A stretch of 64,000 bases of DNA from Octopus sinensis (Eukaryota): contig NC_043025.1 of assembly GCF_006345805.1 (NCBI RefSeq), forward strand, positions 11,780,001 through 11,844,000, given 5' to 3'. Under the pieces are notes generated by a model that saw only the letters and a program-made list of their open reading frames with translations, was not told the DNA's origin and did not search any database. Below, in pieces: positions 4,872-63,996 of the stretch. Both the position numbers and the translations under genes were made by a program. The number at the start of each line of letters is the position of its first letter. Position 1 is the first letter of the stretch.

Positions 4872-6717
4872 TCTTTTTCCCCCACCCCTCAGCTCTCTCT
4901 CTCCCTCTTCTCTCTCTCTCTCTCTCTCGCTTACCCTCTTGAAAAAATCCACTTCAGAATATTTGGCTTCATGTGGTGATGTTGTTGTTGCTTTTGTTGT
5001 TGTTTTTGTTGTTGTTTTTGTTGTTTTTTAGTTGTTGTTGCTGTTGTTATTGTTGTTGTCCCTGGTAATTTATTGAAACACATTTATTTACTTATTTATT
5101 TATTTATTACTATTTTTAATAAGATCGGAAATTCCAGAAAAAACTTGATATCACAAAACGAAACTGATATTCCTTGTATATTCTTTTTATTCTTTCAATC
5201 GTTACACTGCGACCGAGCTGGAGCAACGCCTTAAAGGGATTCAAGCTGTACGAATTGACCCCAGGATTTATTCACTTATATTTTTAAAGCCTGCTACTTT
5301 ATAGATTCCTCTTTGCCGAACCGCTAAGTTACAGGGACATAAACACACCGACATGGTTGTCAAGCGATGGTGATGGTGGTGGTGGTGGTGGTGGGGGGGA
5401 CAAACACCTACACTCACACATCATCATTATCATCATCATCGTTTAACGTCCGTTTTCCATGCTAGCATGGGTTGGACGGTTCGACCGGGGCCTGGGGAGC
5501 CAGGAGGCTGCGCCACGCTCCAGTCTTGATCTGGCAGAGTTTCTACAGCTGGATGCCCTTCCTAATACCAACCACTCCGTGAGTGTAGTGGGTGCTTTTT
5601 ACATGCCAGTGGCGCGTAAAAAGCACCCACTACAATCACCGGTACTGAAATGTTTTTTATTAAATTATTTTAGCATTTTCTACCTTGACTGTTTTCCATA
5701 TATATATATATATATATATATTACCCGGAGTAAACACATAAATGTGAAACAAGGTGGAAAAAAGTACTCAAATACCAGAGGTAGAGTAATATGCTTTATT
5801 TAAGCAGCAGAAAATTCAACAAAACCTGTTACTCTGAGTAGCAGGTTTTGTTGAATTTTCTGCTGCTTTAAATAAAGTATATATATGTATATATATATAT
5901 TATATATATATATCACCGTGATCACCATGACCAGCCAGGCTATCAGATGTTGCTACACATTGCTGGTTACAATGTGCTTCGCATTGTATTTTAGCCTTCA
6001 AATGACACCACCCCGGTGGCTAAGCGAGCAGGCCAACAGAAGGAAGAGTGAGAGAAAGTTGTGGCGAAAGAGTACAGCAGGGATCGCCACCATCCCCTGC
6101 CGGAGCCTTGTGGAGCTTTAGGTGTCTTCGCTCAATAAATACTCACAACGCCTGGTCTGGGAATCGAAACCGCGATCCTACAACCACGAGTCCGCTGCCC
6201 TAACCACTGGGCCATTGCACCTCCACACACACATATATATATATATAATATATATATATATCATCAGCATCATCATCATCATCGTTTAACGTCCGTTTTC
6301 CGCGCTAGCATGGGTTGGACGGTTCGACCGGGGTCTGGGAAGCCAGGAGTCTGCACCAGACTCCAACCTTGATCTGGCAGTGTTTCTACAGCCGGATGCC
6401 CTTCCTAACGCCAACCACTCCACGAGTGTAGTGGGTGCTTTTTACGTGCCACTGGAACAGGTGCCAGGGGAGTCTGGCAGCGGCAACAATCGGTTGGTGC
6501 TTTTTACGTGCCACCGGCACAGAGGCCAGGCGAGGCTGGCAACGGCCACGATCGGATGGTGTTTGTTACGTGCCACCGGCCACCTTCGGATATATATATA
6601 TATATATATAATACAAAATAAGAAAATGGAGAAATACATCTAAATCAATTATCAACTACCAGATAATACCCAATCACATAATTTATTAAACCACTACATA
6701 TGAACATTATGGTTTAA

Positions 6718-14305: not shown

Positions 14306-15490
14306 CTGTCTGTCTGTGTGTGTCTGTGTGTGTGTGTGTCTGTGTGTGTCTGTTTGTGTGTGTGTGTCTGTGTCTCTGTGTGTGTGTGTCTGTGTGTGTG
14401 TGTCTCTGTGTGTGTCGCTGTGTGTGTCTGTGTGTGTGTGAGCAGTTTGAACTGATTGTTCCGACTGTTCGCGAAACAAACGATTTTTATGTTGCTACCC
14501 TAAGAAAAATAGGTAATAAAAAAAATGCAAACTAATTACAGGTGTAGGCATGGCTGTGTGGTAAGAAGCTTGTTTCCCAGCCATGTGGTTCTGGGTTCAG
14601 TTCCACTGTCTAGTACCCTGGGTAAGTAAGTATCTTCTACTATAGCCTCAGGCTGACCAAACCCTTGTCAGTGGATTTGGTAGACGGAAACTGAAAGAAG
14701 CCTGTCATATATATGTATATATATATAGACGTAGGAGTGGCTGTGTGGTAAGTAGCTTGTTTACGAACCACATGGTTACAGGTTCGGTCCCACGGCGTGG
14801 CACCTTGGGCAAGTGTCTTCTGCTACAGCCCCGGGCCGACCAATGCCTTGTGAGTGGATTTGGTAGACGGAAACTGAAAGAAGCCTGTCGTATATATGTA
14901 TATGTATATATATATAATATATATATAATATATATATATTATATATATATATATATAGTATGTGTTTTGTGTGTCTGTGTTTGTCCCCCTAGCATTGCTT
15001 GACAACCGATGCGGGTGTGTTTACGTCCCCGTCACTTAGCGGTTCGGCAAAACAGAGCGATAGAATAAGTACTGGGCTTACAAAGAATAAATCCTGGGGT
15101 CGATTTGCTCGACTAAAGGTGGTGCTCCAGCATGGCAGCAGTCAAATGACTGAAACAAGTAAAAGAGTAAAAGAGAATATATATATATATATATATATAA
15201 GTGTGGCTGTAGGGTAAGAAGCTTGTTTTCCAACCACATGGTTCTGGGTTCAGTCCTGCCATGTGGCACCTTGGGTAAGTGTCTTCTACTATAGCCTTGT
15301 ACCAACCAAAATCTTGTGAGTGGATTTGGTAGACAAAAACTGAAAGAAGTTTGTCATTTATATATGTTGAGACCCCTATCGGTCATGACTGACCATGCGA
15401 TTGCACCTAGAAAGTTACCCTCCTAGACACAAGTCCGAGCAAGGTTGTTTATGGAAGACCAGCAGTCGCCCATGCATACCAGCCTCTCCT

Positions 15491-16160
15491 CTCCACGCCA
15501 CCAGTGTTATCCAAGGGAAAGACAAAGGTCGATACAGCTTGGCACCAGTGACGTCGCAACCCTTCTCCACGCCACCAGTGTTATCCAAGGGAAAGACAAA
15601 GGTCGATACAGCTTGGCACCAGTGACGTCGCAACTCCTTTCTCCACGCCACCAGTGTTATCCAAGGGAAAGACAAAGGTCGATACAGCTTGGCACCAGTG
15701 ACGTCGCAACTCCTTTCTCCACGCCACCAGTGTTATCCAAGGGAAAGACAAAGGTCGATACAGCTTGGCACCAGTGACGTCGCAACTCCTTTCTCCACGC
15801 CACCAGTGTTATCCAAGGGAAAGACAAAGGTTCGATACAGCTTGGCACCAGTGACGTCGCAACTCCTTTCTCCACGCCACAGGTTATCAAGGGAAAGACA
15901 AAGGTCGATACAGTTGGCACCAGTGACGTCGCAACTCCTTCTCCACGCCACCAGTGTTATCCAAGGGAAAGACAAGGTCGATACAGCTTGGCACCAGTGA
16001 CGTCGCAACTCCTTTCTCCACGCCCCAGTGTTATCCAGGGAAAGACAAAGGTCGATACAGCTTGGCACCAGTGACGTCGCAACTCCTTTCTCCACGCCAC
16101 CAGTGTTATCCAAGGGAAAGACAAAGGTCGATACAGCTTGGCACCTGTGACGTCTCAACT
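15491..16160. repeat. 76-bp tandem array (~9 units) inside a SINE-like element
   Basis: CTCCACGCCACCAGTGTTATCCAAGGG.. at 15491, 15565, 15641, 15717, 15793, 15870, 15941, ~16016 and ~16090. Confidence 0.95.
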
Positions 16161-17112
16161 CATTTCAGCAGCTGAGTGAACTGGAGCAACGTGAAATAAA
16201 GTGTCTTGCTCAAGAACACAACACGCAGCCTGGTCTGGGATTCGAACTCACGACCCCACGATTGTAAGCTTGACGCTCTAACCACTGAGCCATGTGCCTT
16301 CACACACACATCTATACTCTTTTACTCTTTTGTTTCAGTCATTTGTATGCGGCCATGCTGGAGCACCACCTTTAATTGAGCAAATCGACCACGGGACTTA
16401 TTCTTTGTAAGCCCAGTACTTATTCTATCGGTCTCTTTTGCCGAACCGCTAAGTGACGGGGACATAAACACACAAGCATCGGTTGTCAAGCAATGCTAGG
16501 GGGACAAACACAGACACACAAACAACCACACGCATATATATAACATATATACGACGGGCTTCTTTTCAGTTTCCGTCTACCAAATCCACTCACAAGGCTT
16601 TGGTCGGCCCGAGGCAATAGTAGAAGACATTTGCCCAAGGTGCCACACAGTGGGACTGAACCCGGGACCATGTGGTTGGTTAGCAAGCTACTTACCACAC
16701 AGCCATTCCATGCACCTTCACACGCACACATATATATATATATATATCATCATCATCATTTAACGTCCATTGTCCAAGCTGGAATGGGTTGGACAGTGGT
16801 GATTGGGGATGGTAAACTGAGGGTGCCTAAGGTGTAACACAGTGGGACTGAACCCGGAACCATGTGGTTGGTAAGCAAGCTACTTACCACACAGCCACTC
16901 CTGTACCTATTTAAAAAAAATATTTTTTAATCACTTTTTAATCTATGGAACACTCATATTAACTGTTCAATGCTCGCAATGAGGAGTAGATAGACAGCCG
17001 ACAACTGATGACGGGTCAATTTTGGGGTTACTTGTCCTGTTTTCCATTTTTTTCTTTCATTGTTTACGTATTTCATGTTGTTTACTGTTGGTGAAATCCG
17101 TGTACCCATATA

Positions 17113-24606: not shown

Positions 24607-24976
24607 AACTAGCAGTATCGCCCGGCGTTGCTCGGTTTGTAAGGGAAATAGCTATAAAGCATTTTTAGAGAGTTATAGCCAAAAATGGAAAAAAAAATGA
24701 TGGTAATTTTTTTTTAGTTAAAAAGGTCGAGTTGCGTCCCCCCAGACAGTCTGTGGTTTGTGTTTCTGATTCTCGACCCCATGTCGAATTTATCGATTTT
24801 TTTTCAGAACTGGGGGAACTTTTCAAAATTTTCACTGCGTTAGTTTTGAATTATGACATTGGGCTATGTGTGTGTCAAGTTTCATCAGAATCGGTTGAAA
24901 GCCGTGGTCAGGGTGAGGGTACAACCAAACCCACACAGAAACACACACAGACAAACTGCCGTTTATATAGAGACAG

Positions 24977-24978
<2 letters not shown>
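24607..24978 (+). mobile_element. HINE/DINE-like non-autonomous element (subfamily A)
   Basis: AACTAGCAGTATCGCCCGGCGTTGCTCGG 5' end, AAGTTTCATCAGAATCGG motif, ACAC/ACAG-rich 3' region and TATATAG end. Confidence 0.7.
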
Positions 24979-25605: not shown

Positions 25606-25799
25606 AAGAATCTCGCAAACCAAATCCAAAAACGAAAGTGAAGTCTTTTGCTGAAGAATACAGAGCACCGCATGGTTCAGGAATCGAAACCACGTCCTTG
25701 CGATACTGTGTGTAGCATCCAAACTACTTGGCCGTGTGTCTAGTAGTTAGATTGGTTGCCCCAAGTACACCATAGCTCCGGCCGTGTGAAGATCAGTTC

Positions 25800-26510
25800 A
25801 AATTCCACCAAGGTCGACTTTGCCTTTCATCCTTTCGGGGTCGATAAATTAAGTACCAGTTACGCACTGGTGTCGATGTGATCGACTTAATACCTATGTC
25901 TGTCCTTGTTTGTCCCCTCTATGTTTAGCCCCTTGTGGATAGTAAAGAAATAGGTATTTCGTCTGCCGCTACGTTCTGAGTTCAAATTCCGCCGAGGTCG
26001 ACTTTGCCTTTCATCCTTTCGGGGTCGATAAATCAAGTACGTTAGCACTGGGGTCGATTAATCGACTTAATCCCTTTGTCTGTCCTTGTTTGTCCCTTCT
26101 GTGTTTAGCCCCTTGTGGGTAGTAAAGAATAGGTATTTCGTCTGCCGCTACGTTCTGAGTTCAAATTCCGCCGAGGTCGACTTTGCCTTTCAACTTTTCG
26201 GGGTCGATAAATAAAGTACCAGTTACGCACTGGGGTCGATGTAATCGACTTAATCCCTTTGTCTGTCCTTGTTTGTCCCCTCTATGTTTAGCCCCTTGTG
26301 GGTAGTAGAGAAATAGGTATTTCGTCTGCCGCTACGTTCTGAGTTCAAATTCCGCCGAGGTCGACTTTGCCTTTCATCCTTTCGGGGTCGATAAATCAAG
26401 TACCAGTTACGCACTGGGGTCGATGTAATCGACTTAATCCCTTTGTCTGTCCTTGTTTGTCCCCTCTATGTTTAGCCCCTTGTGGGTAGTAAAGAAATAG
26501 GTATATAGTA
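25800..26510 (+). mobile_element. SINE family 3, tandem tetramer
   Basis: Four ~184-bp units joined by AAGAAATAG|GTATTTCGTCTG. Confidence 0.88.
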
Positions 26511-26595
26511 GTAAAGCGTATAAAAGCAGTGACACACACGCATTCAGCAAGAGTTGCTTCCCCTATACCACAAATTACGCTAGTATTTTTAGCGT

Positions 26596-27131
26596 AATCT
26601 CTCTCTCTATAATGCTGAAGTTGTCTGTGTGTGGCAGGTTTGGTAGCCTTCAACTAACACTATCTCCTCCGAGACCCTGCGGCGCAAGTTGACCAAAATT
26701 GAGAGTTTGATAGAAGAAGGCTTGCTCTTCCTTCTGTAGAAGAAAAAAATTCTTTTATGATGAATTTACTGGTGCTGGTGGCACATAAAAAGCACCCTAG
26801 CACTTCTGGGAGTTTATTCTCAGGCGCTTGAGGTGACCAACAACAACAATGACAACCACATGATGCTTTGCTTGTATCAATACTTACAACGTAGGGCCAT
26901 GTTAACACTAAAAATTATTTACATCAAAAAGGTGCTTTTTTTTTCTATGAAAATCCCTATTTTTTAACGATTTATTCACTGCTGTGTCGCCAATTTTCTG
27001 TGTATTTCAACCAGAAAAATGTTCACTTAAAGAGAATAACAAGCTACATAATGCAAAATATTTACTTTTCAAAAATTCCAATTCTAAAGGGTCGAAACAA
27101 ACCCGAGCAACACCGGGCGATACCGCTAGTA
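26596..27131 (-). mobile_element. Single-core copy of the same HINE-like element carrying a captured host-gene fragment
   Basis: Reverse complement of the 58124 5' end plus one core unit; the insert at 26752-26896 matches 57145-57286. Confidence 0.85.
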
Positions 27132-27169: not shown

Positions 27170-27915
27170 ATATTTCTTTACTACCCACAAGGGGATAAAC
27201 ATAGAGAGGACAAAGAAGGACAGACAAACGGATTAAGTCGATTACATCAACTCCAGTGCGTAACTGGTACTTATTTAATCAACCCCAAAAGGATGAAAGG
27301 CAAAGTCGACCTCGCGGAATTTGAACTCAGAACGTAACGGCAGACGAAATACCTATTTCTTTACTACCCACAAGGGGCTAACACAGAGGGAAAAAACAAA
27401 GACAGACATAGGTATTAAGTCGATTAACATCAACTCCAGTGCGTAACTGGTACTTATTTATCGACCCCGAAAGGATGAAAGGCAAAGTCGACCTCGGCGA
27501 AATTTGAACTCACAACGTAACGGCAGACGAAATACCTATTTCTTTACTACCCACAAGGGGCTAAACATAGAGGGGACAAACAAGGACAGACATAGGTATT
27601 AAGTCGATCACATCGACACCAGTGCGTAACTGGTACTTAATTTATCGACCCCGAAAGGATGAAAGGCAAAGTCGACCTCGGCGGAATTTGAACTCACAAC
27701 GTAACGGCAGACGAAATACCTATTTCTTTACTACCCACAAGGGGCTAAACATAGAGGGGACAAACAAGGACAGACATAGGTATTAAGTCGATCACATCGA
27801 CACCAGTGCGTAACTGGTACTTAATTTATCGACCCCGAAAGGATGAAAGGCAAAGTCGACCTCACAACGTAACGGCTAAACACTTCGCCCGGCGCGCTAA
27901 CGATTCTGCCAGCTC
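27170..27915 (-). mobile_element. SINE family 3, tandem tetramer
   Basis: Units at 27172, 27354, 27537 and 27721; same junction. Confidence 0.88.
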
Positions 27916-31261: not shown

Positions 31262-31448
31262 CTTTCTCTTTACTCTTTTACTTGTTTCAGTCATTTGACT
31301 GCGGCCATGCTGGAGCACCGCCTTTAATCGAGCAACTCGACCCCGGGACTTGTTCTTTTGTAAGCCCAGTACTTATTCTATCGTCTCTTTACCGAACCAA
31401 CTAAGTAACGAGGGACATAAACTCACCACCATCGGTTGTCAAGCAATG

Positions 31449-31485
<37 letters not shown>

Positions 31486-31665
31486 TATACTCTTTTACTT
31501 GTTTCAGTCATTTGACTGCGGCCATGCTGGAGCACCGCCTTTAATCGAGCAACTCGACCCCGGGACTTGTTCTTTTGTAAGCCCGTACTTATTCTATCGG
31601 TCTCTTTTACCGAACCACTAAGTAACGAGGGACATAAACTCACCACCATCGGTTGTCAAGCAATG

Positions 31666-31711
<46 letters not shown>

Positions 31712-31885
31712 TCTTTTACTTGTTTCAGTCATTTGACTGCGGCCATGCTGGAGCACCGCCTTTATCGAGCAACTCGACCCCGGGACTTGTTCTTTTGTAA
31801 GCCAGTACTTATTCTATCGGTCTCTTTTACCGAACCGCTAAGTAACGAGGGACATAAACTCACCACCATCGGTTGTCAAGCAATG

Positions 31886-31917
<32 letters not shown>

Positions 31918-32105
31918 TCTTTTACTTGTTTCAGTCATTTGACTGCGGCCTGCTGGAGCACCGCCTTTAATCGAGCAACTCGACCCCGGGACTTGTTCTT
32001 TTGTAAGCCCAGTACTTATTCTATCGGTCTCTTTTACCGAACCGCTAAGTAACGAGGGACATAAACTCACCACCATCGGTTGTCAAGCAATGCTAGGGGG
32101 ACAAA
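31262..32105 (-). repeat. Four tandem copies of the SINE family 1 3' half, separated by (TA)n
   Basis: TACTCTTTTACTTGTTTCAGTC at 31271, 31488, 31709 and 31915. Confidence 0.92.
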
Positions 32106-33845: not shown

Positions 33846-35074
33846 TATAATGAAATTATTGTATACAGTGCTCAGGTGCACCACAACTTGTCAGAAAGTG
33901 CATATAAAGTACATGCAGTAATGTAGAAATGTCTGGAAAGCGAACAATGTATGAGTCAGATACATGCTTGATTGTGTGTATGGAGGGGAGAAAATCAAGT
34001 GTAGTGTTGGCGAATCTCAGGAAGCATGGAAGTTTAGGATGCAGTGCTCCGACAACTAACAACTGATGCCGGCAGTTTGTTCCATGCTTCAGCAACTCTC
34101 AGCGTGAAAAAATGTTTCCTGAAGTCATGGGAGCTGTGCTGTTTTCTGACTTTGTAAATATGTCCACGGGTGTTAGATGGGTGGAGTTTGAAAAGGTGCT
34201 CAGAGTTATTGTTTGTACGATGGTTGATAATTTTATGGGTGTCTGTCAAGTCAGCTGCCAGACGTCGGAGTTTCAATGTGTCCATGCCCAGGGAAGTAAG
34301 GCGTTCAGGATATGGCAAATGCCTGATGGAGGGTATTCTTTTGGTTGCACGTCGCTGAACGGGTTCCAGACGATTGATATCCTGGGCAAGATAGTGGTTC
34401 CAGACCGGTGATGCAAATTCCAGGTGAGGTCTTACCATAGCTATATAAAACCGCAGATAGATAGCCGGAGAGCGGCTCACAAAGGATTTGGTGAGTGATG
34501 CCAAGACACCCTCAGCCTTCTTGACAATTTTAGCGATGTGTTTTGTCCAATGCAAATCCCTGTCGACAATAACACCCAGGTCACGTTCACATGAAGACTT
34601 TTTGAGACTAGTGTTGTGGAGGGAGTAGGTGGACGCCGGGTTTCTCCTCCCAAAATGCATGGTGGTACATTTGTCCACAGCCAGCTTGAGTTGCCAGTCC
34701 ATGATCCACTGCTGCATTGTGTCCAGGTCTGCTTGCAATAGAGATCCATAGTGTATAGGATCTGACCTCTTTATTTCGAGGTACAGCTTGATGTCATTTG
34801 CATATTTCAGCACTGTGGCATTCTTTAAGTTGGCATCTATGTCATTAACATATGCAATAAATAAAAGGGGGCCAAGAACAGATCCCTGTGGTACACTAGA
34901 TGTCATCTCATAGGGCGAAGAGTGCTGTCCTAGAACTGCGACAACCTCTTTTTGGCCGAAAATAAAGGACTTCAACCAGTTATAGAATTCGTCTCTTACA
35001 CCCAACGCAGAAAGCTTCACCATAAGTCTTTTGTGTGGCACAGAGTTAAAAGCCTTAGCAAAGTCCAGGTAAAC
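33846..35074 (-). mobile_element. 5'-truncated CR1-type LINE, RT C-terminal half
   Basis: 335-aa ORF 34034-35041 with QGSVLGPLLF, YAND (catalytic YADD altered), DLGV, RPHLEFASPVW, AWNKLP; 3' UTR ends in a TAT/ATT-rich tail. Confidence 0.92.
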
Positions 35075-35588
35075 ATGTTCTTCTTTTCGGATTATGGCTG
35101 CTGTTGCTTAGTGAGTGGGATTGACTCAGTGCACAGCCTTTCCTCACTTCAAAAAAAATCTTCTTGCACAGGCATTGCACGACAACAACATTGATTAAGC
35201 TTCGTGCAATGGCCATACTCGATAACAAGGGGGCAGCCACCATGTATGTATATACACACATACAGGTATACAAGCATGCAATTGAAAACATATGCACACA
35301 TTCAGGGTATGGGCAGAAAAAACTCACTTTAGACAAATTGTGAAAGTCATTATAAACATTGACATACTTAGATATTGGTTTTTGATATATTGAAGTTGAA
35401 TACAGATAAGAAAAGTAGGTGACTAATACCAAAGCGGAGAGAGTGGGGGAAAATGTAAGAGACTAGGAGAGATTTTGTGGGACTGATAGGTGAAGTAGGA
35501 TGACTAGAATGATCTCGTTAGCTTGATGTTGATTAGAAAGTCATTGCCAGATGGCTCGAGGTTTGATCACAAGCACTGTGTCTGTGCA

Positions 35589-36266: not shown

Positions 36267-36644
36267 ATCTTTATATATAAAAGAAAAGATGTAGTGTCTG
36301 TCTTATACAATTTAGATTCCTAACTACTCCCACATTTTGCGGTGCAGTTTAACCAAATTCGGGTATCTTATAGTCGTGATTCATATCGAGCCCTTCTGGG
36401 TATTAGGATGAGTCTACGATTTTAAAAATAATTTACCATCATTTTTTTCCATTTTTAATGCATTTTTGGCATATATAAGGAAGTAACTCTCTAAAAATTT
36501 AATAATAAATCTCAGAACGTAAAAAGCTACAGTAACGCCCCTCCCCCTTTGTGATTAGCCATATTGAGATGGCTATTATACTTTACATCTCTAAAAATGC
36601 TTATATAGTTATTTCCCTTACAAACCCGAGCGATACTGCTAGTA
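36267..36644 (-). mobile_element. HINE-like element (subfamily C)
   Basis: Ends CCCTTACAAACCCGAGC..GATACTGCTAGT; its body is shared with 46797-47199. Confidence 0.7.
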
Positions 36645-37345: not shown

Positions 37346-40274
37346 TAAATAATAATAAAATAATAATGAAATTATTGTATACAGTGCTCAGGTGCACCAC
37401 AACTTGTCAGAAAGTGCATATAAAGTACATGCAGTAATGTAGAAATGTCTGGAAAGTGAGCATGCTTGTGTGTGTATGGAGGGGAGGAAATCAAGTGTAG
37501 TGTTGGCGAATCTCAGGAAGCATGGAAGTTTTGAAGGATGCAGTGCTCCGACAACTAACAACCGATGCCGGCAGTTTGTTCCATGCTTCAGTGTGTGATG
37601 GGAGGGAGAAAATCAAGTGTAGTGTTGGCGAATCTCAGGAAGCATGGAAGTTTTGAAGATGCAGTGCTCCAACAACTAACAACCGATGCCGGCAGTTTGT
37701 TCCACGCTTCAGCGTGTGTATGGAGGGGAGAAAATCAAGTGTAGTGTTGGCGAATCTCAGGAAGCATGGAAGTTTTGAAGGATGCAGTGCTCCAACAACT
37801 AACAACCGATGCCGGCAGTTTGTTCCATGCTTCAGCGTGTGTATGGAGGGGAGAAAATCAAGTGTAGTGTTGGCGAATCTCAGGAAGCATGGAAGTTTTG
37901 AAGGATGCAGTGCTCCAACAACTAACAACCGATGCCGGCAGTTTGTTCCACGCTTCAGCGTGTGTATGGAGGGGAGAAAATCAAGTGTAGTGTTGGCGAA
38001 TCTCAGGAAGCATGGAAGTTTTGAAGGATGCAGTGCTCCAACAACTAACAACCGATGCGGCAGTTTGTTCCACGCTTCAGCGTGTGTATGGAGGGGAGAA
38101 AATCAAGTGTAGTGTTGGCGATCTCAGGAAGCATGGAAGTTTTGAAGGATGCAGTGCTCCAACAAATAACAACCGATGCCGGCAGTTTTGTTCCCCACGC
38201 TTCAGCGTGTGTATGGAGGGGAGAAAATCAAGTGTAGTGTTGGCGAATCTCAGAAGCATGGAAGTTTTGAAGGATGCAGTGCTCCAACAACTAACAACCG
38301 ATGCCGGCAGTTTGTTCCACGCTTCAGCGTGTGTATGGAGGGGAGAAAATCAGTTGTAGTGTTGGCGAATCTCAGAAGCATGGAAGTTTTGAAGGATGCA
38401 GTGCTCCGACAACTAACAACTGATGCCGGCAGTTTGTTCCACGCTTCAGTCAGCTGTGTATGGAGGGGAGAAAATCAGGTGTAGTGTTGGCGAATCTCAG
38501 GAAGCATGGAAGTTTTGAAGGATGCAGTGCTCCGACAACTAACAACTGATGCCGGCAGTTTGTTCCATGCTTCAGCGTGTGTATGGAGGGGAGAAAATCA
38601 AGTGTAGTGTTGGCGAATCTCAGGAAGCATGGAAGTTTTTGAAGGGCAGTGCTCCGACAACTAACAACCGATGCCGGCAGTTTGTTCCATGCTTCAGCGT
38701 GTGTATGGAGGGGAAAAATCAAGTGTAGTGTTGGCGAATCTCAGGAAGCATGGAAGTTTTGAAGGATGCAGTGCTCCGACAACTAACAACTGATGCCAGC
38801 AGTTTGTTCCATGCTTCAGCGTGTGTATGGAGGGGAGAAAATCAAGTGTAGTGTTGGCGAATCTCAGGAAGCATGGAAGTTTTGAAGGATGCAGTGCTCC
38901 AACAACTAACAACCGATGCCGGCAGTTTGTTCCACGCTTCAGCGTGTGTATGGAGGGGAGAAAATCAAGTGTAGTGTTGGCGAATCTCAGGAAGCATGGA
39001 AGTTTTGAAGGATGCAGTGCTCCAACAACTAACAACCGATGCCGGCAGTTTGTTCCACGCTTCAGCGTGTCTATGGAGGGGAGAAAATCAGGTGTAGTGT
39101 TGGCGAATCTCAGGAAGCATGGAAGTTTTGAAGGATGCAGTGCTCCAACAACTAACAACCGATGCCGGCAGTTTGTTCCATGCTTCAGCGTGTGTATGGA
39201 GGGGAGAAAATCAAGTGTAGTGTTGGCGAATCTCAGGAAGCATGGAAGTTTTGAAGGATGCAGTGCTCCGACAACTAACAACTGATGCCGGCAGTTTGTT
39301 CCACGCTTCAGCGTGTGTATGGAGGGGAGAAAATCAAGTGTAGTGTTGGCGAATCTCAGGAAGCATGGAAGTTTTGAAGGATGCAGTGCTCCGACAACTA
39401 ACAACTGATGCCGGCAGTTTGTTCCACGCTTCAGCGTGTGTATGGAGGGGAGAAAATCAAGTGTAGTGTTGGCGAATCTCAGGAAGCATGGAAGTTTTGA
39501 AGGATGCAGTGCTCCGACAACTAACAACTGATGCCGGCAGTTTGTTCCATGCTTCAGCGTGTGTATGGAGGGGAGAAAATCAAGTGTAGTGTTGGCGAAT
39601 CTCAGGAAGCATGGAAGTTTTGAAGGATGCAGTGCTCCGACAACTAACAACTGATGCCAGCAGTTTGTTCCATGCTTCAGCGTGTGTATGGAGGGGAGAA
39701 AATCAAGTGTAGTGTTGGCGAATCTCAGGAAGCATGGAAGTTTTGAAGGATGCAGTGCTCCAACAACTAACAACCGATGCCGGCAGTTTGTTCCACGCTT
39801 CAGCGTGTGTATGGAGGGGAGAAAATCAAGTGTAGTGTTGGCGAATCTCAGAAGCATGGAAGTTTTGAAGGATGCAGTGCTCCAACAACTAACAACCGAT
39901 GCCGGCAGTTTGTTCCACGCTTCAGCGTGTCTATGGAGGGGAGAAAATCAGGTGTAGTGTTGGCGAATCTCAGGAAGCATGGAAGTTTTGAAGGATGCAG
40001 TGCTCCAACAACTAACAACCGATGCCGGCAGTTTGTTCCATGCTTCAGCGTGTGTATGGAGGGGAGAAGATCAGGTGTAGTGTTGGCGAATCTCAGGAAG
40101 CATGGAAGTTTTGAAGGATGCAGTGCTCCGACAACTAACAACTGATGCCGGCAGTTTGTTCCACGCTTCAGCAACTCTCAGCGTGAAAAAATGTTTCCTG
40201 AAGTCATGGAAGGAGCTTTGCTGTTTTCTTACTTTGTAAATATGTCCACGGGTGTTAGATGGGTGGAGTTTGAA
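37346..40274 (-). mobile_element. Short CR1-type 3' fragment inflated by an internal tandem array
   Basis: 37360-37460 matches the LINE tail at 33848-33940; 40170-40272 matches 34090-34190; poly(TAT) tail at 37346. Confidence 0.88.
37470..40172. repeat. 123-bp tandem array (~22 units) derived from the CR1 ORF end and 3' UTR
   Basis: The unit GTGTGTATGGAGGGGAGAAAATC...TTCCACGCTTCAGC repeats at ~123-bp spacing; 41-aa periodicity is visible in ORF 38694-39857. Confidence 0.97.
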
Positions 40275-46796: not shown

Positions 46797-47199
46797 ATCT
46801 TTATATATAAAAGTGAAGTTGTGTGGTGTCTGTCTCCTACGATTTAGATTCCTAACTACTCCCACATTTTGCGGTGCAGTCTAACCAAAAGCAGGTATCT
46901 TATAGTCGTGATTCATATCGAGCCCTTCTGGGTATTAGCGCGCGTCTACGATGAGTCTACGATTTAAAAAAGAAATTACCATCATTTTTTCCCATTTTGA
47001 TGCATTTTTTTCGCTATTATATAAGGGAAGTAACTCTCTAAAAATGTCTACGATGAGTCAACGATCTAAAAAAAAATTTACCATAATTTTTTTCCCATAT
47101 TTAATGCATTTTTTTGCTATTTTTTGGCTATAACTCTCTAAAAATGCTTATATAGTTATTTCCCTTACAAATCCGAGCAACGCCGGGCGATACTGCTAT
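46797..47199 (-). mobile_element. HINE-like element (subfamily C)
   Basis: Ends TCCGAGCAACGCCGGGCGATACTGCTA; has an internal duplicated GAGTCTACGAT..AAAA..TTACCAT block. Confidence 0.7.
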
Positions 47200-48657: not shown

Positions 48658-50144
48658 TTAACCCTTTTGTTACTAACCTAGCCAAAACCGGCTCTGGGTC
48701 TGTAGTAAAAATGTCTTGTTTTCATAAGTTCTGAATTAAAATCTTCCACCAAACCTTAGTCACAATTTATGTTCCTAACACTAGCTGAATGATAACTAAG
48801 TTATTTTACTAAATTCTTTGTTATATTTAAAGTAATTGAAAGAAACACAGAGCATTTCAGCAGAAATATGGTAACAGAAGGGTTAAAATATATAATAGAG
48901 AATCAATTCTTAACCCTTTTGATACCAACCCGGCTTAAACCACCTCTGGCTCTGAGTACAAATGTCTTGTTTTCATAAGTTCTGAATTAAAATCTTCCAC
49001 CAAACCTTAGTCATAATTTATGTTCCTAACACTAGCTGAATGATAACTAAGTTATTTTACTAAATTCTTTGTTATATTTAAAGTAATTGAAAGAAACACA
49101 GAGCATCTCAGCAGAAATATGGTAACAAAAGGGTTAAGATATATAATAGAGAATCAATTCTTAACCCTTTTGATACCAACCTGGCTGAAACCACCTCTGG
49201 CTCTGAGTACAAATGTCTTGTTTTCTTAAGTTTTGAATTATAATCTTCCACCAAACCTTAGTCACAATTTATGTTCCTAACACTAGCTTAATGATAACTA
49301 AGTTATTTTACTAAATTCTTTGTTATATTTAAGTAATTGAAAGAAACACAGAGCATCTCAACATCGAAATATGGTAACAAAAGGGTTAAGTATATAATAG
49401 AGAAACAATTCTTAACCCTTTTGATACCAACCTGGTTGAAACCACCTCTGGCTCTGTAGTACAAATGTCTTGTTTTCATAAGTTCTGAATTAAAATCTTC
49501 CACCAAACCTTAGTCACAATTTATGTTCCTAACACTAGCTGAATGATAACTAAGTTATTTTACTAAATTCTTTGTTATATTTAAAGTAATTGAAAGAAAC
49601 ACAGAGCATCTCAGCAGAAATATGGTAACAAAAGGGTTAAAATATATAATAGAGAATCAATTCTTAACCCTTTTGATACCAACCTGGTTGAAACCACCTC
49701 TGGCTCTGAGTACAAATGTCTTGTTTTCTTAAGTTTTGAATTATAATCTTCCACCAAACCTTAGTCACAATTTATGTTCCTAACACTAGCTTAATGATAA
49801 CTAAGTTATTTTACTAAATTCTTTGTTATATTTAAAGTAATTGAAAGAAACACAGAGCATCTCAACAGAAATATGGTAACAAAAGGGTTAAGATATATAA
49901 TAGAGAAACAATTCTTAACCCTTTTGATACCAACCTGGTTGAAACCACCTCTGGCTCTGTAGTACAAATGTCTTGTTTTCATAAGTTTTGAATTATAATC
50001 TTCCACCAAACCTTAGTCACAATTTATGTTCCTAACACTAGCTGAATGATAACTAAGTTATTTTACTAAAGTCTTTCTTATATTTAAAGTAATTGAAAGA
50101 AACACAGAGCATCTCAAAATAGATACAGGAACCAAAGGGTTAAG
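48658..50144. repeat. Tandem array of six piggyBac-type MITEs (~251-bp period)
   Basis: TTAACCCTTTT starts at 48658, 48910, 49161, 49412, 49664 and 49915. Units 1-5 end GGTAACA(A/G)AAGGGTTAA (unit 6 ends GGAACCAAAGGGTTAA) and are separated by a conserved 23-bp spacer. Confidence 0.95.
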
Positions 50145-55907: not shown

Positions 55908-56092
55908 ATGAGAGTCAGTTCAGTAAGGGCTCTGCTAGTGGTGGGGCTGGTGGGTGTGGCCCTCATCACAACAGCCACTGCTGCTGCTAACGAAGACCTC
56001 ATCCACAGCCTGCCTGGTCTGAAGAAGCAACCCATGTTTCAACAATACTCAGGGTACTTAGATGGCATTGATGGCCGTCACCTTCATTATTG
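55908..56092 (+). CDS. CTSA: Cathepsin A / lysosomal protective protein-like serine carboxypeptidase (S10), first coding exon
   Basis: ATG at 55908 follows a polypyrimidine/TTTCAG acceptor (AG 55898-55899). Encodes a hydrophobic signal peptide then [33 protein letters not shown], the typical S10 N-terminus. Donor TG|GTGAGT at 56093 splits the Trp codon (phase 2). Confidence 0.9.
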
Positions 56093-56805: not shown

Positions 56806-57041
56806 GGTGGCAGCGAAATTCTTATGGTATGAATGAGTTTTGGTGTTGTTGGTCGTAGTGGTGGTACCAATGGCTTTCTCTCACTCTCTCTCCCCCCTTT
56901 CTCACTTTCCCTATCTTTCTCTCTTCCTCTTTCTCTCTCCACCTCTCCTCCCCCTCTCTCTCCATCTACCCCTCTCCCTCTCTCTCTCTCTCTCTCTCTC
57001 TGTCTCAAATATAATTCTGCTCTTTTTCTCTCCCTAAAAAG

Positions 57042-57153
57042 GTTAGTGGAATCTCAGCAGAACCCCAAAACTGACCCCTTGGTTTTGTGGATGAATGGAG
57101 GTCCAGGGTGTAGCTCATTGCTGGCTGTGCTGACTGAACATGGGCCCTACGTT
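57042..57153 (+). CDS. CTSA: S10 carboxypeptidase coding exon 2 (oxyanion-hole motif)
   Basis: AG|G acceptor completes the Trp codon, then [37 protein letters not shown]; donor GTAAGT at 57154. 112 nt, in frame with exon 1 (185+112=297). [10 protein letters not shown] is the S10 hallmark. Confidence 0.93.
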
Positions 57154-57528
57154 GTAAGTATTGATACAAGCAATGCATCATGTTGTTGTCGTTGTTGTTG
57201 TTGGTCACCTCAAGCGCCTGAGAATTAACTCTCAGAGGCGCTAGGGTGCTTTTTATGTGCCACCAGCACCAGTAAATTCATAAAAGTTGTGAGACAAGGC
57301 TCTTCAAAAGATGGGTATGTATTATTCGAGGGAGATTGTTATATGACTGATGACGAGAGGTTAAATCATGAAAGAGGGACTGAAACAGGCATGTTACTTG
57401 CAGAGGAGGTGTGGGCCATCTAGGTTGTAAAAGGAGAGAAGATGGTGAAGAGGTATCGGGGCATATCCTCAAGTTACACACCAGCATCGGTTGTCAAGCG
57501 ATGTTGGGGGGACAAACACAGACACACA

Positions 57529-57856
<328 letters not shown>

Positions 57857-58123: not shown

Positions 58124-61100
58124 AACTAGCAGTATCGCCCGGCATTGCTCGGGTTTGTTTCGACCCTTTAGAATTGGAATTTTTGAAGAGTAAAAATTTT
58201 GCATTATGTAGCTTGTTATTCTCTTTAAGTGAACATTTTTCTGGTTGAAATACACCAAAAAATGGCGACACAGCAGTCAAAAAATCGTAAAAAATAGGGA
58301 TTTCCATAGAAAGAAAGCACCTTTTTGATGTAAATAATTTTTGGTGTTAACATGGTCCAATTTTAATTTTTTCTTCTACGGAACGAAGAGCAAGCCTTCT
58401 TCTATCATACTCTTAATTTTGGTCAACTTGCGCCGCAGGGTCTTGGAGGAGATAGTGTTAGTTGAAGACTACCAAACCTGCCATACACAGACAACTTCAG
58501 CTTTATAAATCGTAAAAAATAGGGATTTTCATAGAAAAAAAAGCACCTTTTTGATGTAAATAATTTCTGGTGTTAACATGGTCCGATTTGAATTTTTTCT
58601 TCAACGGAATGAAGAGCAAGCCTTCTTCTATCATACTCTCAATTTTGGTCAACTTGCGCCGCAGGGTCACGGAGGAGATAGTGTTAGTTGAAGGCTACTA
58701 AACCTACCATACACAGACAACTTCAGCTTTAGAAATTGTAAACAATAGGGATTTTCATAGAAAAAAAGCACCTTTTTGATGTAAATAATTTCTGGTGTTA
58801 ACATGGTCCGATTTGAATTTTTTCTTCAACGGAATGAAGAGCAAGCCTTCTTCTATCATACTCTCAATTTTGGTCAACTTGTGCCGCAGGGTCTTGGAGG
58901 AGATAGTGTTAGTTGAAGGCTACCAAACCTGCCACACACTGACAACTTCACATAGAAAAAAAAGCACCTTTTTGATGCAAATAATTTTTGGTGTCAACAT
59001 AGTCCGATTTAATTTTTTCTTCTACGGAATGAAGAGCAAGCCTTCTTCTATCATACGCTCAATTTTGGTCAACTTGCGCCACAGGGTCACAGAGGAGATA
59101 GTGTTAGTTGAAGGCTACTAAACCTACCATACACAGACAACTTCAGCTTTAGAATTGTAAACAATAGGGATTTTCATAGAAAAAAAAGCACCTTTTTGAT
59201 GGAAATAATTTTTGGTGTTAACATGGTCCGATTTGAATTTTTTCTTCAACGGAATGAAGAGCAGCCTTCTTCTATCATACGCTCAATTTTGGTCACTTGC
59301 GCCGCAGGGTCTTGGAGGAGATAGTGTTAGTTGAAGGCTACTAAACCTACCATACACAGACACTTCAGCTTAGAAATTGTAAACAATAGGGATTTTCATA
59401 GAAAAAAAGCACCTTTTTGATGCAAATAATTTTTGGTGTTAACATGGTCCGATTTGAATTTTTTCTTCAACGGAATGAAGAGCAAGCCTTCTTCTATCAT
59501 ACGCTCAATTTTGGTCAACTTGCGCCGCAGGGTCTCGGAGGAGATAGTGTTAGTTGAAGGCTACTAAACCTACCATACACAGACAACTTCAGCTTTAGAA
59601 ATTGTAAACAATAGGGATTTTCATAGAAAAAAAGCACCTTTTTGATGCAAATAATTTTTGGTGTTAACATGGTCCGATTTGAATTTTTTCTTCAACGGAA
59701 TGAAGAGCAAGCCTTCTTCTATCATACGCTCAATTTTGGTCAACTTGCGCCGCAGGGTCTCGGAGGAGATAGTGTTAGTTGAAGGCTACTAAACCTACCA
59801 TACACAGACAACTTCAGCTTTAGAAATTGTAAACAATAGGGATTTTCATAGAAAAAAAGCACCTTTTTGATGTAAATAATTTCTGGTGTTAACATGGTCC
59901 GATTTGAATTTTTTCTTCAACGGAATGAAGAGCAAGCCTTCTTCTATCATACTCTCAATTTTGGTCAACTTGTGCCGCAGGGTCTTGGAGGAGATAGTGT
60001 TAGTTGAAGGCTACCAAACCTGCCACACACTGACAACTTCAGCTTTAGAAATTGTAAACAATAGGGATTTTCATAGAAAAAAAGCACCTTTTTGATGTAA
60101 ATAATTTCTGGTGTTAACATGGTCCGATTTGAATTTTTTCTTCAACGGAATGAAGAGCAAGCCTTCTTCTATCATACTCTCAATTTTGGTCAACTTGTGC
60201 CGCAGGGTCTTGGAAGATAGTGTTAGTTGAAGGCTACCAAACCTGCCACACACTGACAACTTCACATAGAAAAAAAAGCACCTTTTTGATGCAAATAATT
60301 TTTGGTGTCAACATAGTCCGATTTAATTTTTTCTTCTACGGAATGAAGAGCAAGCCTTCTTCTATCATACGCTCAATTTTGGTCAACTTGCGCCGCAGGG
60401 TCTTGGAGGAGATAGTGTTAGTTGAAGGCTACTAAACCTACCATACACAGACAACTTCAGCTTTAGAAATTGTAAACAATAGGGATTTTCATAGAAAAAA
60501 AGCACCTTTTTGATGCAAATAATTTTTGGTGTTAACATGGTCCGATTTGAATTTTTTCTTCAACGGAATGAAGAGCAATCCTTCTTCTATCATACGCTCA
60601 ATTTTGGTCAACTTGCTCCGCAGGGTCTCGGAGGAGATAGTGTTAGTTGAAGGCTACTAAACCTACCATACACAGACAACTTCAGCTTTAGAAATTGTAA
60701 ACAATAGGGATTTTCATAGAAAAAAAAGCACCTTTTTGATGCAAATAATTTTTGGTGTTAACATGGTCCGATTTGAATTTTTTCTTCAACGGAATGAAGA
60801 GCAAGCCTTCTTCTATCATACGCTCAATTTTGGTCAACTTGCGCCGCAGGGTCTTGGAGGAGATAGTGTTAGTTGAAGGCTACTAAACCTACCATACACA
60901 GACAACTTCAGCTTTAGAAATTGTAAACAATAGGGATTTTCATAGAAAAAAAAGCACCTTTTTGATGCAAATAATTTTTGGTGTTAACATGGTCCGATTT
61001 GAATTTTTTCTTCAACGGAATGAAGAGCAAGCCTTCTTCTATCATACGCTCAATTTTGGTCAACTTGCGCCGCAGGGTCTTGGAGGAGATAGTGTTAGTT

Positions 61101-61804
61101 GAAGGCTAATAAACCTACCATACACAAACAACTTCAGCTTTAGAAATTGTAAACAATAGGGATTTTCATAGAAAAAAAAGCACCTTTTTGATGCAAATAA
61201 TTTTTGGTGTTAACATGGTCCAATTTGAATTTTTTCTTCAACGGAATGAAGAGCAAGCCTTCTTCTATCATACGCTCAATTTCGGTCAACTTGTGCCGCA
61301 GGGTCTTGGAGGAGATAGTGTTAGTTGAAGGCTACCAAACCTGCCACACACTGACAACTTCACATAGAAAAAAAAGCACCTTTTTGATGCAAATAATTTT
61401 TGGTGTTAACATGGTCCGATTTGAATTTTTTCTTCTACGGAATGAAGAGCAAGCCTTCTTCTATCATACTCTCAATTTTGGTCAACTTGCGCCGCAGGGT
61501 CTCGGAGGAGATAGTGTTAGTTGAAGGCTACCAAACCTGCCATACACAGACAACTTCAGCTTTAGAAATTGTAAACAATAGGGATTTTCATAGAAAAAAA
61601 GCACCTTTTTGATGCAAATAATTTTTGGTGTTAAAATGGTCCGATTTGAATTTTTTCTTCAACGGAATGAAGAGCAAGCCTTCTTCTATCAAACTCTCAA
61701 TTTTGGTCAACTTGTGCTGCAGGGTCTCGGAGGAGATAGTGTTAGTTGAAGGCTACCAAACCTGCCATACACAGACAACTTCAGCTTTATATATAGAGAG
61801 AGAT
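58124..61804 (+). mobile_element. Non-autonomous Helentron/HINE-like element with expanded core repeats (intron 2)
   Basis: 5' AACTAGCAGTATCGCCCGGCATTGCTCGGG (subterminal hairpin), tandem core, 3' TATATAGAGAGAGA end. The same 5' end occurs in four other copies. Family assignment is by architecture only. Confidence 0.7.
58296..61790. repeat. ~225-bp satellite, 16 units (three ~195-bp deletion variants)
   Basis: The CATAGAAA anchor recurs at 58305, 58530, 58756, 58951, 59175, 59397, 59622, 59847, 60072, 60265, 60490, 60715, 60941, 61167, 61363 and 61589. Confidence 0.97.
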
Positions 61805-61908: not shown

Positions 61909-61956
61909 ATTCAAGATGACACTTCTTTAGAATATAATCCTCACAGCTGGAACAAG
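61909..61956 (+). CDS. CTSA: S10 carboxypeptidase coding exon 3
   Basis: Pyrimidine-rich upstream, TTCAG acceptor, 48 nt in phase 0 encoding IQDDTSLEYNPHSWNK (the S10 N-P-x-S-W-N motif), donor GTAAAT. Too short to appear in the ORF track. Confidence 0.88.
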
Positions 61957-63909: not shown

Positions 63910-63996
63910 ATTGCAAACGTCCTGTATCTGGAGGCCCCAGCAGGAGTTGGTTTCTCTTATAAAGATGACAAGAATTACACCACAGATGATGACTTG
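63910..63996 (+). CDS. CTSA: S10 carboxypeptidase coding exon 4; gene continues beyond window
   Basis: TTTTTCAG acceptor, encodes [29 protein letters not shown] (conserved ANxLxLExPxGVGFSY). GT at 63997 is the probable donor, but only 4 nt remain so the 3' end is uncertain. Confidence 0.88.

What the first reader, a model, noticed from the sequence alone, without database searches (positions are those of the whole stretch)
26752..26896. Helentron/HINE-like element has captured the exon-2/intron-2 boundary of the neighbouring carboxypeptidase gene
Seen: in the minus-strand element at 26596-27131, the consensus core segment TCCGATTTG is replaced by ~145 bp whose reverse complement aligns to 57145-57286 (last 9 nt of exon 2, the GTAAGT donor, start of intron 2). 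By my manual alignment it has 7 substitutions and one 3-nt indel (~95%). One junction sits on a 7-nt microhomology AACATGG shared by element and exon; the other has about 1 nt. The ORF track echoes this ([20 protein letters not shown] in both 26660-26908 and 56833-57228). The source lies ~840 bp from a sister element in intron 2. Known: rolling-circle elements capture host gene fragments. Inference: local microhomology-mediated template switching or gap repair moved a splice-donor-containing gene piece into a mobile element, the first step of exon shuffling.
Basis: partly seen in the sequence, partly recalled or inferred. Interest (0 to 1): 0.8.

Follow-up and report, generated by a model that had tools for sequence, protein, structure and literature searches.

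The report
Gene fragment copied into a Helitron
A small rolling-circle transposon copy carries a 145-bp copy of the exon/intron boundary of a cathepsin-A-like gene 30 kb away; this is real but is an ordinary example of how Helitrons pick up host DNA.

Summary
Window 26752-26896 is the reverse complement of 57145-57286, with 7 substitutions and one 3-nt indel. The pair is unique in the window.

The source is the last 9 nt of coding exon 2, the GTAAGT donor and 127 nt of intron 2 of a cathepsin-A-like serine carboxypeptidase gene. The block replaces 8-9 nt (TCCGATTTG) in the middle of the carrier's single 225-bp unit.

The carrier is misclassified. Five family copies in the window all read A|TC...GC hairpin...CTAG|T with no inverted repeats. 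That makes it a canonical non-autonomous Helitron on the plus strand (26598-27129), not a minus-strand Helentron/HINE. The "3' stem-loop" is flanking DNA.

A small deletion plus a templated insertion with short junction homologies fits the published filler-DNA model of internal Helitron capture. The 7-nt AACATGG homology is one base out of register.

The source lies 840 bp downstream of the 3' end of sister Helitron E2, in the same relative orientation. All three parts of the chimera are equally diverged from that locus (JC 0.053-0.059), so E2 was probably involved.

Copy number, mobilisation and any use of the captured splice donor could not be tested. This is a new instance of a known kind, of modest interest.

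The parts
26598..27129 (+). E1: 532-bp non-autonomous canonical Helitron, A|TCTCTC...CCGCTAG|T, with a single 225-bp-type unit interrupted by the captured block
   Evidence: Termini and flanks. Homology to E2. No terminal inverted repeats.
26598..26751 (+). E1 5' terminus plus the 5' part of the unit. It is closest to the 5'-most E2 unit, U16.
   Evidence: 8 mismatches in 151 nt against 61651-61803, JC 0.055 +/- 0.020. Shared variants with U16.
26752..26896 (-). Captured block. Read on the minus strand it is CCCTACGTT (end of coding exon 2) + GTAAGT donor + start of intron 2 of the carboxypeptidase gene. It is antisense to the Helitron.
26897..26903 (.). CCATGTT (= AACATGG on the minus strand): element sequence also present in the exon just upstream of the copied part
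26897..27129 (+). 3' part of the unit plus the Helitron 3' region. Hairpin at 27102-27117 (one stem pair lost compared with E2); CTAG at 27126-27129.
   Evidence: 13 mismatches in 230 nt against 58126-58358, JC 0.059 +/- 0.016. Fold.
57145..57286 (+). Source of the block: last 9 nt of coding exon 2 (57145-57153), donor GTAAGT (57154-57159), and 127 nt of intron 2
57137..57143 (+). AACATGG in exon 2 (codons for E-H-G), the microhomology with the element. G57144 was not copied.
57042..57153 (+). Coding exon 2 of a cathepsin-A-like serine carboxypeptidase (ATG at 55908; exon 1 ends at 56092; exon 3 is 61909-61956; exon 4 starts near 63910)
   Evidence: Motif scan. Exon 1. Pfam PF00450 E = 1.2e-47. 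Human protective protein E = 3e-52.
58126..61803 (-). E2: sister Helitron, 3678 bp with 16 tandem units of ~225 bp. It is antisense in intron 2 and fills 77% of it. Its 3' CTAG end (58126) lies 840 bp from the source.
24609..24977 (-). E3: 369-bp Helitron sharing only the termini with E1/E2, A|TC...CTAG|T
46798..47199 (+). E4: 402-bp Helitron of the E3 type, A|TC...CTAT|T
36268..36642 (+). E5: 375-bp Helitron of the E4 type (77% identity), hairpin deleted, A|TC...CTAG|T
26574..26598 (.). Perfect 9-bp palindrome (ATTACGCTA/TAGCGTAAT, 7-nt loop) abutting the E1 5' end. It is flanking DNA and is absent from E2-E5.
25795..26509 (.). Left arm of a large inverted repeat (array of 184-bp units). With 27171-27863 it brackets the 671-bp spacer that holds E1.
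27171..27863 (.). Right arm of the same inverted repeat, 90-98% complementary to the left arm depending on register

Best explanation
E1 is a resident copy of a non-autonomous canonical Helitron. One strand was broken or stalled in the middle of its single internal unit. 

The free 3' end, ending in ...GTTAACATGG, paired by microhomology with the AACATGG in exon 2 of the cathepsin-A-like gene about 30 kb away on the same DNA molecule. It was extended for about 142 nt across the splice donor into intron 2. It was then joined back to the other side of the break with 1 nt of homology and the loss of 8-9 nt of element sequence.

This is a templated ("filler DNA") insertion, by synthesis-dependent end joining or replicative template switching. 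It is the mechanism already proposed for internal Helitron captures and does not need the Helitron's own enzyme.

The sister Helitron E2 lies 840 bp from the source and probably guided the broken end there by homology. Alternatively, the break happened in a progenitor residing at that locus.

Shown: the copy, its direction, both junctions, the small deletion, the element's family, the local geometry and the equal divergences. Inferred: the break, the order of steps, the role of E2, and where the event took place. No function is indicated; the block is most likely a neutral scar.
For: - One unique 145/142-nt match at 95%, E = 8e-59.
- The sequences on either side of the block are contiguous in the uninterrupted unit except for TCCGATTTG. 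This is a small deletion plus an insertion, not a terminal transduction.
- AACATGG is shared by acceptor and source at one junction and G at the other. PMC6544945 reports 2-13-bp end junctions at source loci of internal Helitron acquisitions and assigns them to the filler-DNA model.
- The direction is gene to element: EHGP is conserved in S10 homologues, and the spliced exons hit PF00450 at 1.2e-47.
- Local origin: source and copy lie 30 kb apart on one molecule. The source is 840 bp downstream of E2's 3' end, in the same orientation relative to the Helitron as in E1.
- JC distances are insert/source 0.053 +/- 0.020, E1/E2 3' part 0.059 +/- 0.016 and E1/E2 5' part 0.055 +/- 0.020.
- The 5% divergence argues against an assembly artefact.
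Against: - The 7-nt microhomology is one base out of register. It needs a slipped pairing or a later 1-nt loss in the GGG run; otherwise only 2 nt are in register.
- 142 nt is long for polymerase-theta-type templated inserts.
- Proximity of the source to E2 is not predicted by plain filler DNA and needs the extra homology-guidance assumption.
- Equal divergence of all three parts fits single-event copying from the E2 locus at least as well.
- Nothing could be checked outside this 64-kb window. Whether E1 is the only chimeric copy, and whether the event happened in place, is unknown.
Confidence: 0.6

Rival explanations
1. Transposition-coupled capture at the E2 locus. While a copy was being made from E2 (or its ancestor), synthesis ran or jumped past the 3' CTAG into the downstream flank. 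It copied 57286 to 57145 and switched back into the element at CCATGTT. The chimeric product then inserted 30 kb away as E1, a local hop.
For: - The source is downstream of E2's 3' end and in the same orientation, the geometry the read-through model requires. Helraiser bypasses its 3' end in about 12% of events (PMC4778049).
- All three parts of E1 are equally diverged from the E2 locus.
- The E1 unit is U16-like on its 5' side and U1-like on its 3' side, with the block exactly between them.
- A related Helitron next to the parental locus is rare in bats, 3 of 49 cases (PMC4224331).
Against: - The 840 bp between E2's end and the source were not carried.
- The block is followed by the family's own 3' region, not a de novo end.
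- Departure and return points lie only 9 nt apart in the unit register, which a double jump does not predict (about 8% by chance).
- The U16/U1 hybrid pattern is equally expected for an ancestral single-unit element, because edge units escape array homogenisation.
Confidence: 0.2
2. E1 is one transposed member of a multicopy chimeric subfamily. The capture, by whatever mechanism, happened once in a master copy and was then amplified.
For: Helitrons carrying captured fragments are commonly amplified (PMC4224331, PMC4778049). E1 has intact TC/CTAG ends and A|T flanks.
Against: There is no second chimeric copy in the window. A copy landing within 30 kb of its source by chance is very unlikely unless it moved locally. 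One pair of the E1 hairpin stem is lost. This reading could not be tested genome-wide.
Confidence: 0.12
3. RNA-templated repair. Unspliced pre-mRNA of the carboxypeptidase gene was reverse-transcribed into a break in E1.
For: The source is transcribed in the sense orientation and spans an exon/intron boundary, as pre-mRNA would. Reverse-transcriptase-encoding elements are present in the window (PF00078).
Against: There is no poly-A or other retro-copy signature, and no need for RNA when a DNA template lies in cis. It does not explain the proximity to E2.
Confidence: 0.04
4. Artefact or coincidence: an assembly chimera, or independent insertion of a common repeat at both sites.
For: A ~25-nt motif inside the block is a common repeat motif in this window.
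Against: - The two copies differ at 7 sites plus an indel, so they are not a collapsed or mis-joined duplicate.
- The match includes 9 nt of conserved coding sequence plus the donor, in the same register.
- Nothing else in the window matches more than 26 nt of it.
Confidence: 0.03

Closest known systems
Internal gene-fragment acquisition by Helitrons under the filler-DNA model (for example Sfru_Hel1Aa/Ab/Ac in Spodoptera frugiperda, PMC6544945)
   Same: A short host fragment sits inside a small non-autonomous Helitron between conserved ends. The source locus is identifiable and there are short homologies at the junctions.
   Different: Here the source is only 30 kb away in cis and 840 bp from a sister element, and one junction's homology is out of register by a base. 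Amplification of the chimera is unknown, whereas the moth exemplars are multicopy.
HelibatN3 (bat Helitron carrying the NUBPL promoter, a piece of coding exon and a splice donor; PMC4778049)
   Same: A Helitron carries a gene piece that ends in a functional-looking splice donor.
   Different: HelibatN3 also carries a promoter, is amplified to thousands of copies and demonstrably makes chimeric transcripts. Here there is no promoter, only 9-16 nt of exon, and no expression evidence.
[quoted passage not shown]
   Same: The parental sequence lies downstream of the 3' end of a related Helitron, in the same orientation.
   Different: The intervening 840 bp were not carried. The block is internal and replaces 9 nt of a unit. 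The 3' end is the family's own.
Helentron-associated interspersed elements (HINE/DINE-1; oyster Cg_HINE with satellite arrays; PMC4067079, PMC7492417)
   Same: Small non-autonomous rolling-circle elements with a central tandem-repeat array that can expand (E2 has 16 units).
   Different: The termini are 5'-TC/CTAG-3' with A|T flanks and a subterminal GC hairpin. There are no subterminal inverted repeats, no TT target and no conserved 3' palindrome.
Templated insertions at chromosome breaks or stalled forks (filler DNA of Gorbunova and Levy 1997; FoSTeS/MMBIR; polymerase-theta end joining). Named from my own knowledge, apart from the Gorbunova reference cited in PMC6544945.
   Same: A small deletion plus insertion of a copy of a cis-located sequence, with 1-7 nt of junction homology.
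   Different: The acceptor happens to be a Helitron and the template lies next to a homologous Helitron. The 142-nt length is at the upper end for end-joining-type inserts.

Membership tests
Canonical Helitron (non-autonomous) | 5' terminus TC joined to a host A | tested here: met
   5 of 5 copies (E1-E5) read a|TC(T)....
Canonical Helitron (non-autonomous) | 3' terminus CTRR (CTAG) joined to a host T | tested here: met
   CTAG|t in E1, E2, E3 and E5; CTAT|t in E4.
Canonical Helitron (non-autonomous) | GC-rich hairpin about 10-12 nt upstream of the 3' end | tested here: met
   CCCGAGC-AAT-GCCGGG ends 12 nt before the 3' end in E2 (DNA fold -4.5 kcal/mol). The same hairpin is present in E3 and E4, has one pair lost in E1 and is deleted in E5. 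Helraiser has its hairpin 11 nt from the end.
Canonical Helitron (non-autonomous) | No terminal inverted repeats and no target-site duplication | tested here: met
   No inverted pair links the first and last 40 nt of E1. The flanks of the five copies are unrelated.
Canonical Helitron (non-autonomous) | A RepHel-encoding autonomous partner with the same ends | not testable with these tools
   None was noticed among the open frames of 70 aa or more in the window, and those frames were not profile-searched for RepHel.
   The 9-bp palindrome at 26574-26598 is present only beside E1. E2-E5 lose homology before it.
Filler-DNA / templated-insertion capture | Block is internal, and the acceptor sequence on both sides is contiguous in uninterrupted copies apart from a small loss | tested here: met
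   Only TCCGATTTG is missing.
Filler-DNA / templated-insertion capture | Short homology between acceptor and source at the junctions | tested here: inconclusive
   AACATGG is shared but offset by one G; in register the homology is GG. The other junction shares 1 nt.
Filler-DNA / templated-insertion capture | A single identifiable source locus | tested here: met
   57145-57286 is the only match in the window. The rest of the genome was not searched.
End-bypass 3' transduction | Captured DNA is contiguous with the donor's 3' flank and lies 3' of the old terminus, ending in a new terminator | tested here: not met
   840 bp were skipped. The block lies upstream of the family's own 233-nt 3' part.

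The most novel reading that the evidence does not exclude
The window preserves all three actors of one capture event: the parental Helitron (E2), the host sequence just downstream of its 3' end, and the chimeric daughter 30 kb away (E1). If so, internal Helitron captures can arise by template switching coupled to copying of the donor locus, followed by a local hop. That route differs from both plain end bypass and random filler DNA. It would also explain why captured fragments end up between intact ends.
Probability: 0.15. Interest if true: 0.55.

Novelty: new member of a known kind. Interest (0 to 1): 0.3.

Why it matters
Helitron gene-fragment capture is well documented, but its mechanism is still debated. 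Parental loci with a related Helitron next to them are rare; 3 of 49 were found in bats (PMC4224331).

This locus has the source, a sister element 840 bp away and the chimera all within 35 kb, and both junctions are readable. It is therefore a useful worked example for choosing between the filler-DNA and read-through models.

It also shows that this tandem-array-bearing family has canonical Helitron ends rather than Helentron ends. That matters for repeat annotation in this genome.

It is not evidence of exon shuffling. No transcript, promoter or host exon context is shown.

Tried and rejected
- **Other copies of the chimera through the protein collections.** The 82-aa frame across the junction has no relative. 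The exon 2+3 peptide finds only 8 short S10 fragments from other taxa. The best large contig (L001) shares no repeats with the window, so it comes from another organism.
- **Metagenome scans.** Scans for the Helitron 3' end and for a unit core both returned nothing.
- **Literature and Rfam.** A full-text search for two repeat strings returned nothing, so the organism is not established. I recall octopus-type repeats, but that is unverified. Rfam finds no family in the window.
- **Is the E1 left flank a degenerate Helitron 3' end (...ACGCTAG|T)?** There is no significant similarity to E3-E5, so I dropped this.
- **Dating the SINE between source and E2**, to see whether the 840-bp gap was once shorter. 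The SINE is 3.7% from the window consensus, which is not clearly younger than the capture, so this gave no conclusion.
- **Unit-by-unit comparison to decide whether E1 descends from a multi-unit E2.** E1 is U1-like on one side and U16-like on the other. This fits both an ancestral single unit and a jump across the array, so it is not decisive.
- **Rejected: Helentron assignment, minus-strand orientation, and independent repeat insertion.**

Full report
**1. The observation**

The window is AT-rich (39.7% GC) and dense in repeats. blastn of 26752-26896 against the whole window finds one non-self match, 57281-57145 on the opposite strand, at 94.9% and E = 8e-59. With element flanks included the match runs to 57137.

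Global alignment gives 145 nt (26752-26896) against 142 nt (57145-57286). There are 7 substitutions and one 3-nt indel, a duplicated CAT in the copy.

A relaxed search with the source finds nothing else longer than 26 nt. The short hits are all to a common motif, GGTGGCACRTAAAAAGCACC, that belongs to other repeats. The block is therefore not a dispersed repeat present at both sites.

**2. What the source is**

The plus strand carries the 5' part of a serine carboxypeptidase gene:
- ATG at 55908, with exon 1 running to 56092 (signal peptide ... LPGL ... YSGYL ... LHYW).
- Exon 2 at 57042-57153 ([37 protein letters not shown]).
- Exon 3 at 61909-61956 (IQDDTSLEYNPHSWNK).
- Exon 4 from about 63910.

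The spliced 118 residues match Pfam Peptidase_S10 positions 1-113 at E = 1.2e-47. They match human lysosomal protective protein (cathepsin A) at E = 3e-52.

E, G and P of the exon-2 end (EHGPYV) are invariant in the eight homologous fragments recovered. The exon end is therefore ancestral, and the transfer went from gene to element.

The copied stretch is the last 9 nt of exon 2, the GTAAGT donor and 127 nt of intron 2. No other S10 motif occurs in the window, so there is no tandem paralogue here.

**3. What the carrier is**

Five related copies are in the window:

| Copy | Coordinates | Strand |
|---|---|---|
| E1 | 26598-27129 | + |
| E2 | 58126-61803 | - |
| E3 | 24609-24977 | - |
| E4 | 46798-47199 | + |
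| E5 | 36268-36642 | + |

E3-E5 share only about 35 nt at each end with E1/E2.

Read in the orientation given, every copy starts a|TC(T)CTCTATATA.... Every copy ends ...CCCGAGCAAYGCCGGGCGATACTGCTAG|t, except that E4 ends CTAT and E5 has lost the hairpin. The GC hairpin (6 bp with a bulged A in E2) ends 12 nt before the terminus. No inverted repeat links the two ends.

These are the hallmarks listed for canonical Helitrons and shown experimentally for Helraiser: 5'-TC/CTAG-3', a palindrome 11 nt from the 3' end, and junctions to A and T (PMC4778049).

The Helentron features are absent. Those are subterminal inverted repeats, a conserved 3' stem-loop and a TT target with T runs (PMC4067079). The perfect 9-bp palindrome at 26574-26598, which suggested a stem-loop, lies beyond the point where E2-E5 stop resembling E1, so it is flanking DNA.

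E2 carries 16 tandem units of about 225 bp and fills 77% of intron 2, antisense to the gene. E1 has a single unit.

**4. Anatomy of the chimera**

In 13 of 16 E2 units the sequence reads AACATGG|TCCGATTTG|AATTTTTTC in gene orientation. E1 reads AACATGG|145 nt|AATTTTTTTC. The event is therefore an 8-9-nt deletion plus a 145-nt insertion in an otherwise continuous unit.

At one junction both partners have AACATGG (exon positions 57137-57143). The source then has G57144, which the copy lacks. The 7-nt homology is one base out of register, and in register only GG is shared. A slipped pairing or a later 1-nt loss in the GGG run would reconcile this. The chance of a 7-nt identity within one base of a junction is about 2e-4 (my calculation). 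The other junction shares a single G.

**5. Geometry after re-orientation**

In Helitron orientation the source lies 840 bp downstream of E2's 3' CTAG. It has the same orientation relative to E2 as the block has relative to E1.

Divergences are indistinguishable:

| Comparison | JC distance |
|---|---|
| Block vs source | 0.053 +/- 0.020 |
| E1 3' part vs E2 | 0.059 +/- 0.016 |
| E1 5' part vs E2 | 0.055 +/- 0.020 |

Several E2 units are identical or 0.5% apart, so the array was amplified after E1 and E2 separated. The E1 unit is like U1 (next to the 3' region) on one side and like U16 (next to the 5' end) on the other.

**6. Mechanism**

A small deletion with a templated insertion and short junction homologies is what the filler-DNA model predicts for internal Helitron acquisitions. 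Published cases show 2-13-bp end junctions at the source loci (PMC6544945).

The end-bypass model (PMC4224331; PMC4778049) predicts a captured flank placed 3' of the old terminus with a new terminator. That is not seen here: 840 bp are skipped and the family's own 3' part follows the block.

I therefore favour microhomology-primed copying at a break or stalled fork inside the element (confidence 0.6).

The source being 30 kb away in cis and next to a homologous 3.7-kb element is hard to credit as chance. I see two ways to account for it:
- A broken E1 end was drawn to E2 by homology and re-annealed nearby.
- The copy was made from the E2 locus and hopped locally (rival, 0.2).

The 9-nt register of departure and return favours the first. 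The equal divergences favour the second slightly. The window cannot decide between them.

One observation made after the fact bears on where the break occurred. E1 sits in the 671-bp spacer between two inverted arrays of 184-bp units, 25795-26509 and 27171-27863, which are 90-98% complementary depending on register. The break point lies 252 nt from one arm and 274 nt from the other in the pre-capture spacer. That is within about 11 nt of the centre, roughly a 4-6% chance. A large quasi-palindrome is a plausible cause of breakage or fork stalling in place. This is inference only.

**7. Function and novelty**

Nothing indicates a function. Only 9-16 nt of coding sequence were copied, no promoter came with it, and E1 lies 29 kb upstream of the gene's ATG. 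The only coding signals found nearby are transposon-derived. Expression cannot be checked here.

A Helitron carrying a gene piece that ends in a splice donor and makes chimeric transcripts is already known (HelibatN3/NUBPL, PMC4778049). This is therefore a new instance of a known kind.

Its modest value is the preserved local geometry, because related Helitrons next to parental loci are rare (3 of 49 in bats). It also corrects the family assignment.

If the genome evolves at the octopus rate quoted in PMC13282606 (JC 0.09 to consensus is about 25 My), a pairwise 0.053 corresponds to roughly 7 My. The organism was not verified, so this figure is conditional.

**8. Limits**

No tool here reaches the rest of this genome. 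Three things remain untested: the copy number of the chimera, the existence of a better-matching paralogous source, and read support for the junctions.

Noticed in passing
window 24609-24977, 36268-36642, 46798-47199, 26598-27129, 58126-61803: There are five canonical-Helitron-type non-autonomous elements in 64 kb. They form two internal types that share only about 35 nt at each end. E3 is embedded in a TA microsatellite, E5 has lost the 3' hairpin and E4 ends CTAT.
   Followed up: yes
window 58305-61789: The 16-unit, ~225-bp array inside Helitron E2 has three ~195-nt units with the same 30-nt deletion (U3, U9, U14). It also has pairs of identical units (U6=U7, U3=U9), which indicates recent segmental amplification in a higher-order pattern. 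The array makes up most of intron 2 of the carboxypeptidase gene.
   Followed up: partly
window 26574-26598: A perfect 9-bp palindrome with a 7-nt loop lies exactly at the Helitron E1 5' junction, and the last paired T is the element's first base (or the original target T). A palindrome this good at this spot is unlikely by chance. Whether hairpin-forming DNA attracts Helitron insertion here is unexplained.
   Followed up: partly
window 25795-26509 and 27171-27863: Two arrays of a 184-bp SINE-like unit lie in inverted orientation (90-98% complementary depending on register) around a 671-bp spacer that holds E1. Before the Helitron arrived the spacer was about 139 bp. The capture break point lies within about 11 nt of the centre of the pre-capture spacer.
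   Followed up: partly
window 26787-26796 / 26931-26940; motif also at 6496, 10013, 23818, 23884, 24036, 53064, 53167, 53479: The captured block and the Helitron unit contain a perfectly complementary 10-mer (AAAAAGCACC / GGTGCTTTTT). It is part of a ~25-nt motif, GGTGGCACRTAAAAAGCACC, that recurs in 62-68-bp tandem repeats across the window. A possible role in pairing was not tested.
   Followed up: no
window 57635-57753: A perfect 50-nt-arm inverted repeat with a 19-nt loop, flanked by long (TA)n tracts, lies in intron 2 between the source and E2. It is either a MITE-like insertion or a fragile hairpin-forming site.
   Followed up: no
window 34037-35107 (-): A 357-codon open frame carries a reverse-transcriptase domain (PF00078, E = 5.7e-12 on a 90-aa sample). 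It is a retrotransposon fragment.
   Followed up: partly
window 37470-40172; 48658-50144; 15490-16166; 31271-32095: Further tandem arrays are present: 123 bp x 22 (96% matches), 251 bp x 5.9, 76 bp x 9 and 217 bp x 3.8. In addition, a ~165-bp SINE has about 17 copies across the window, 0.7-15% from their consensus.
   Followed up: no
L001 10001-10210, and proteins P0003, P0005-P0007: In S10 homologues from other organisms the called open frames run on past ...EHGPFRV into unrelated sequence. This suggests that the intron after this codon sits at a conserved position.
   Followed up: no
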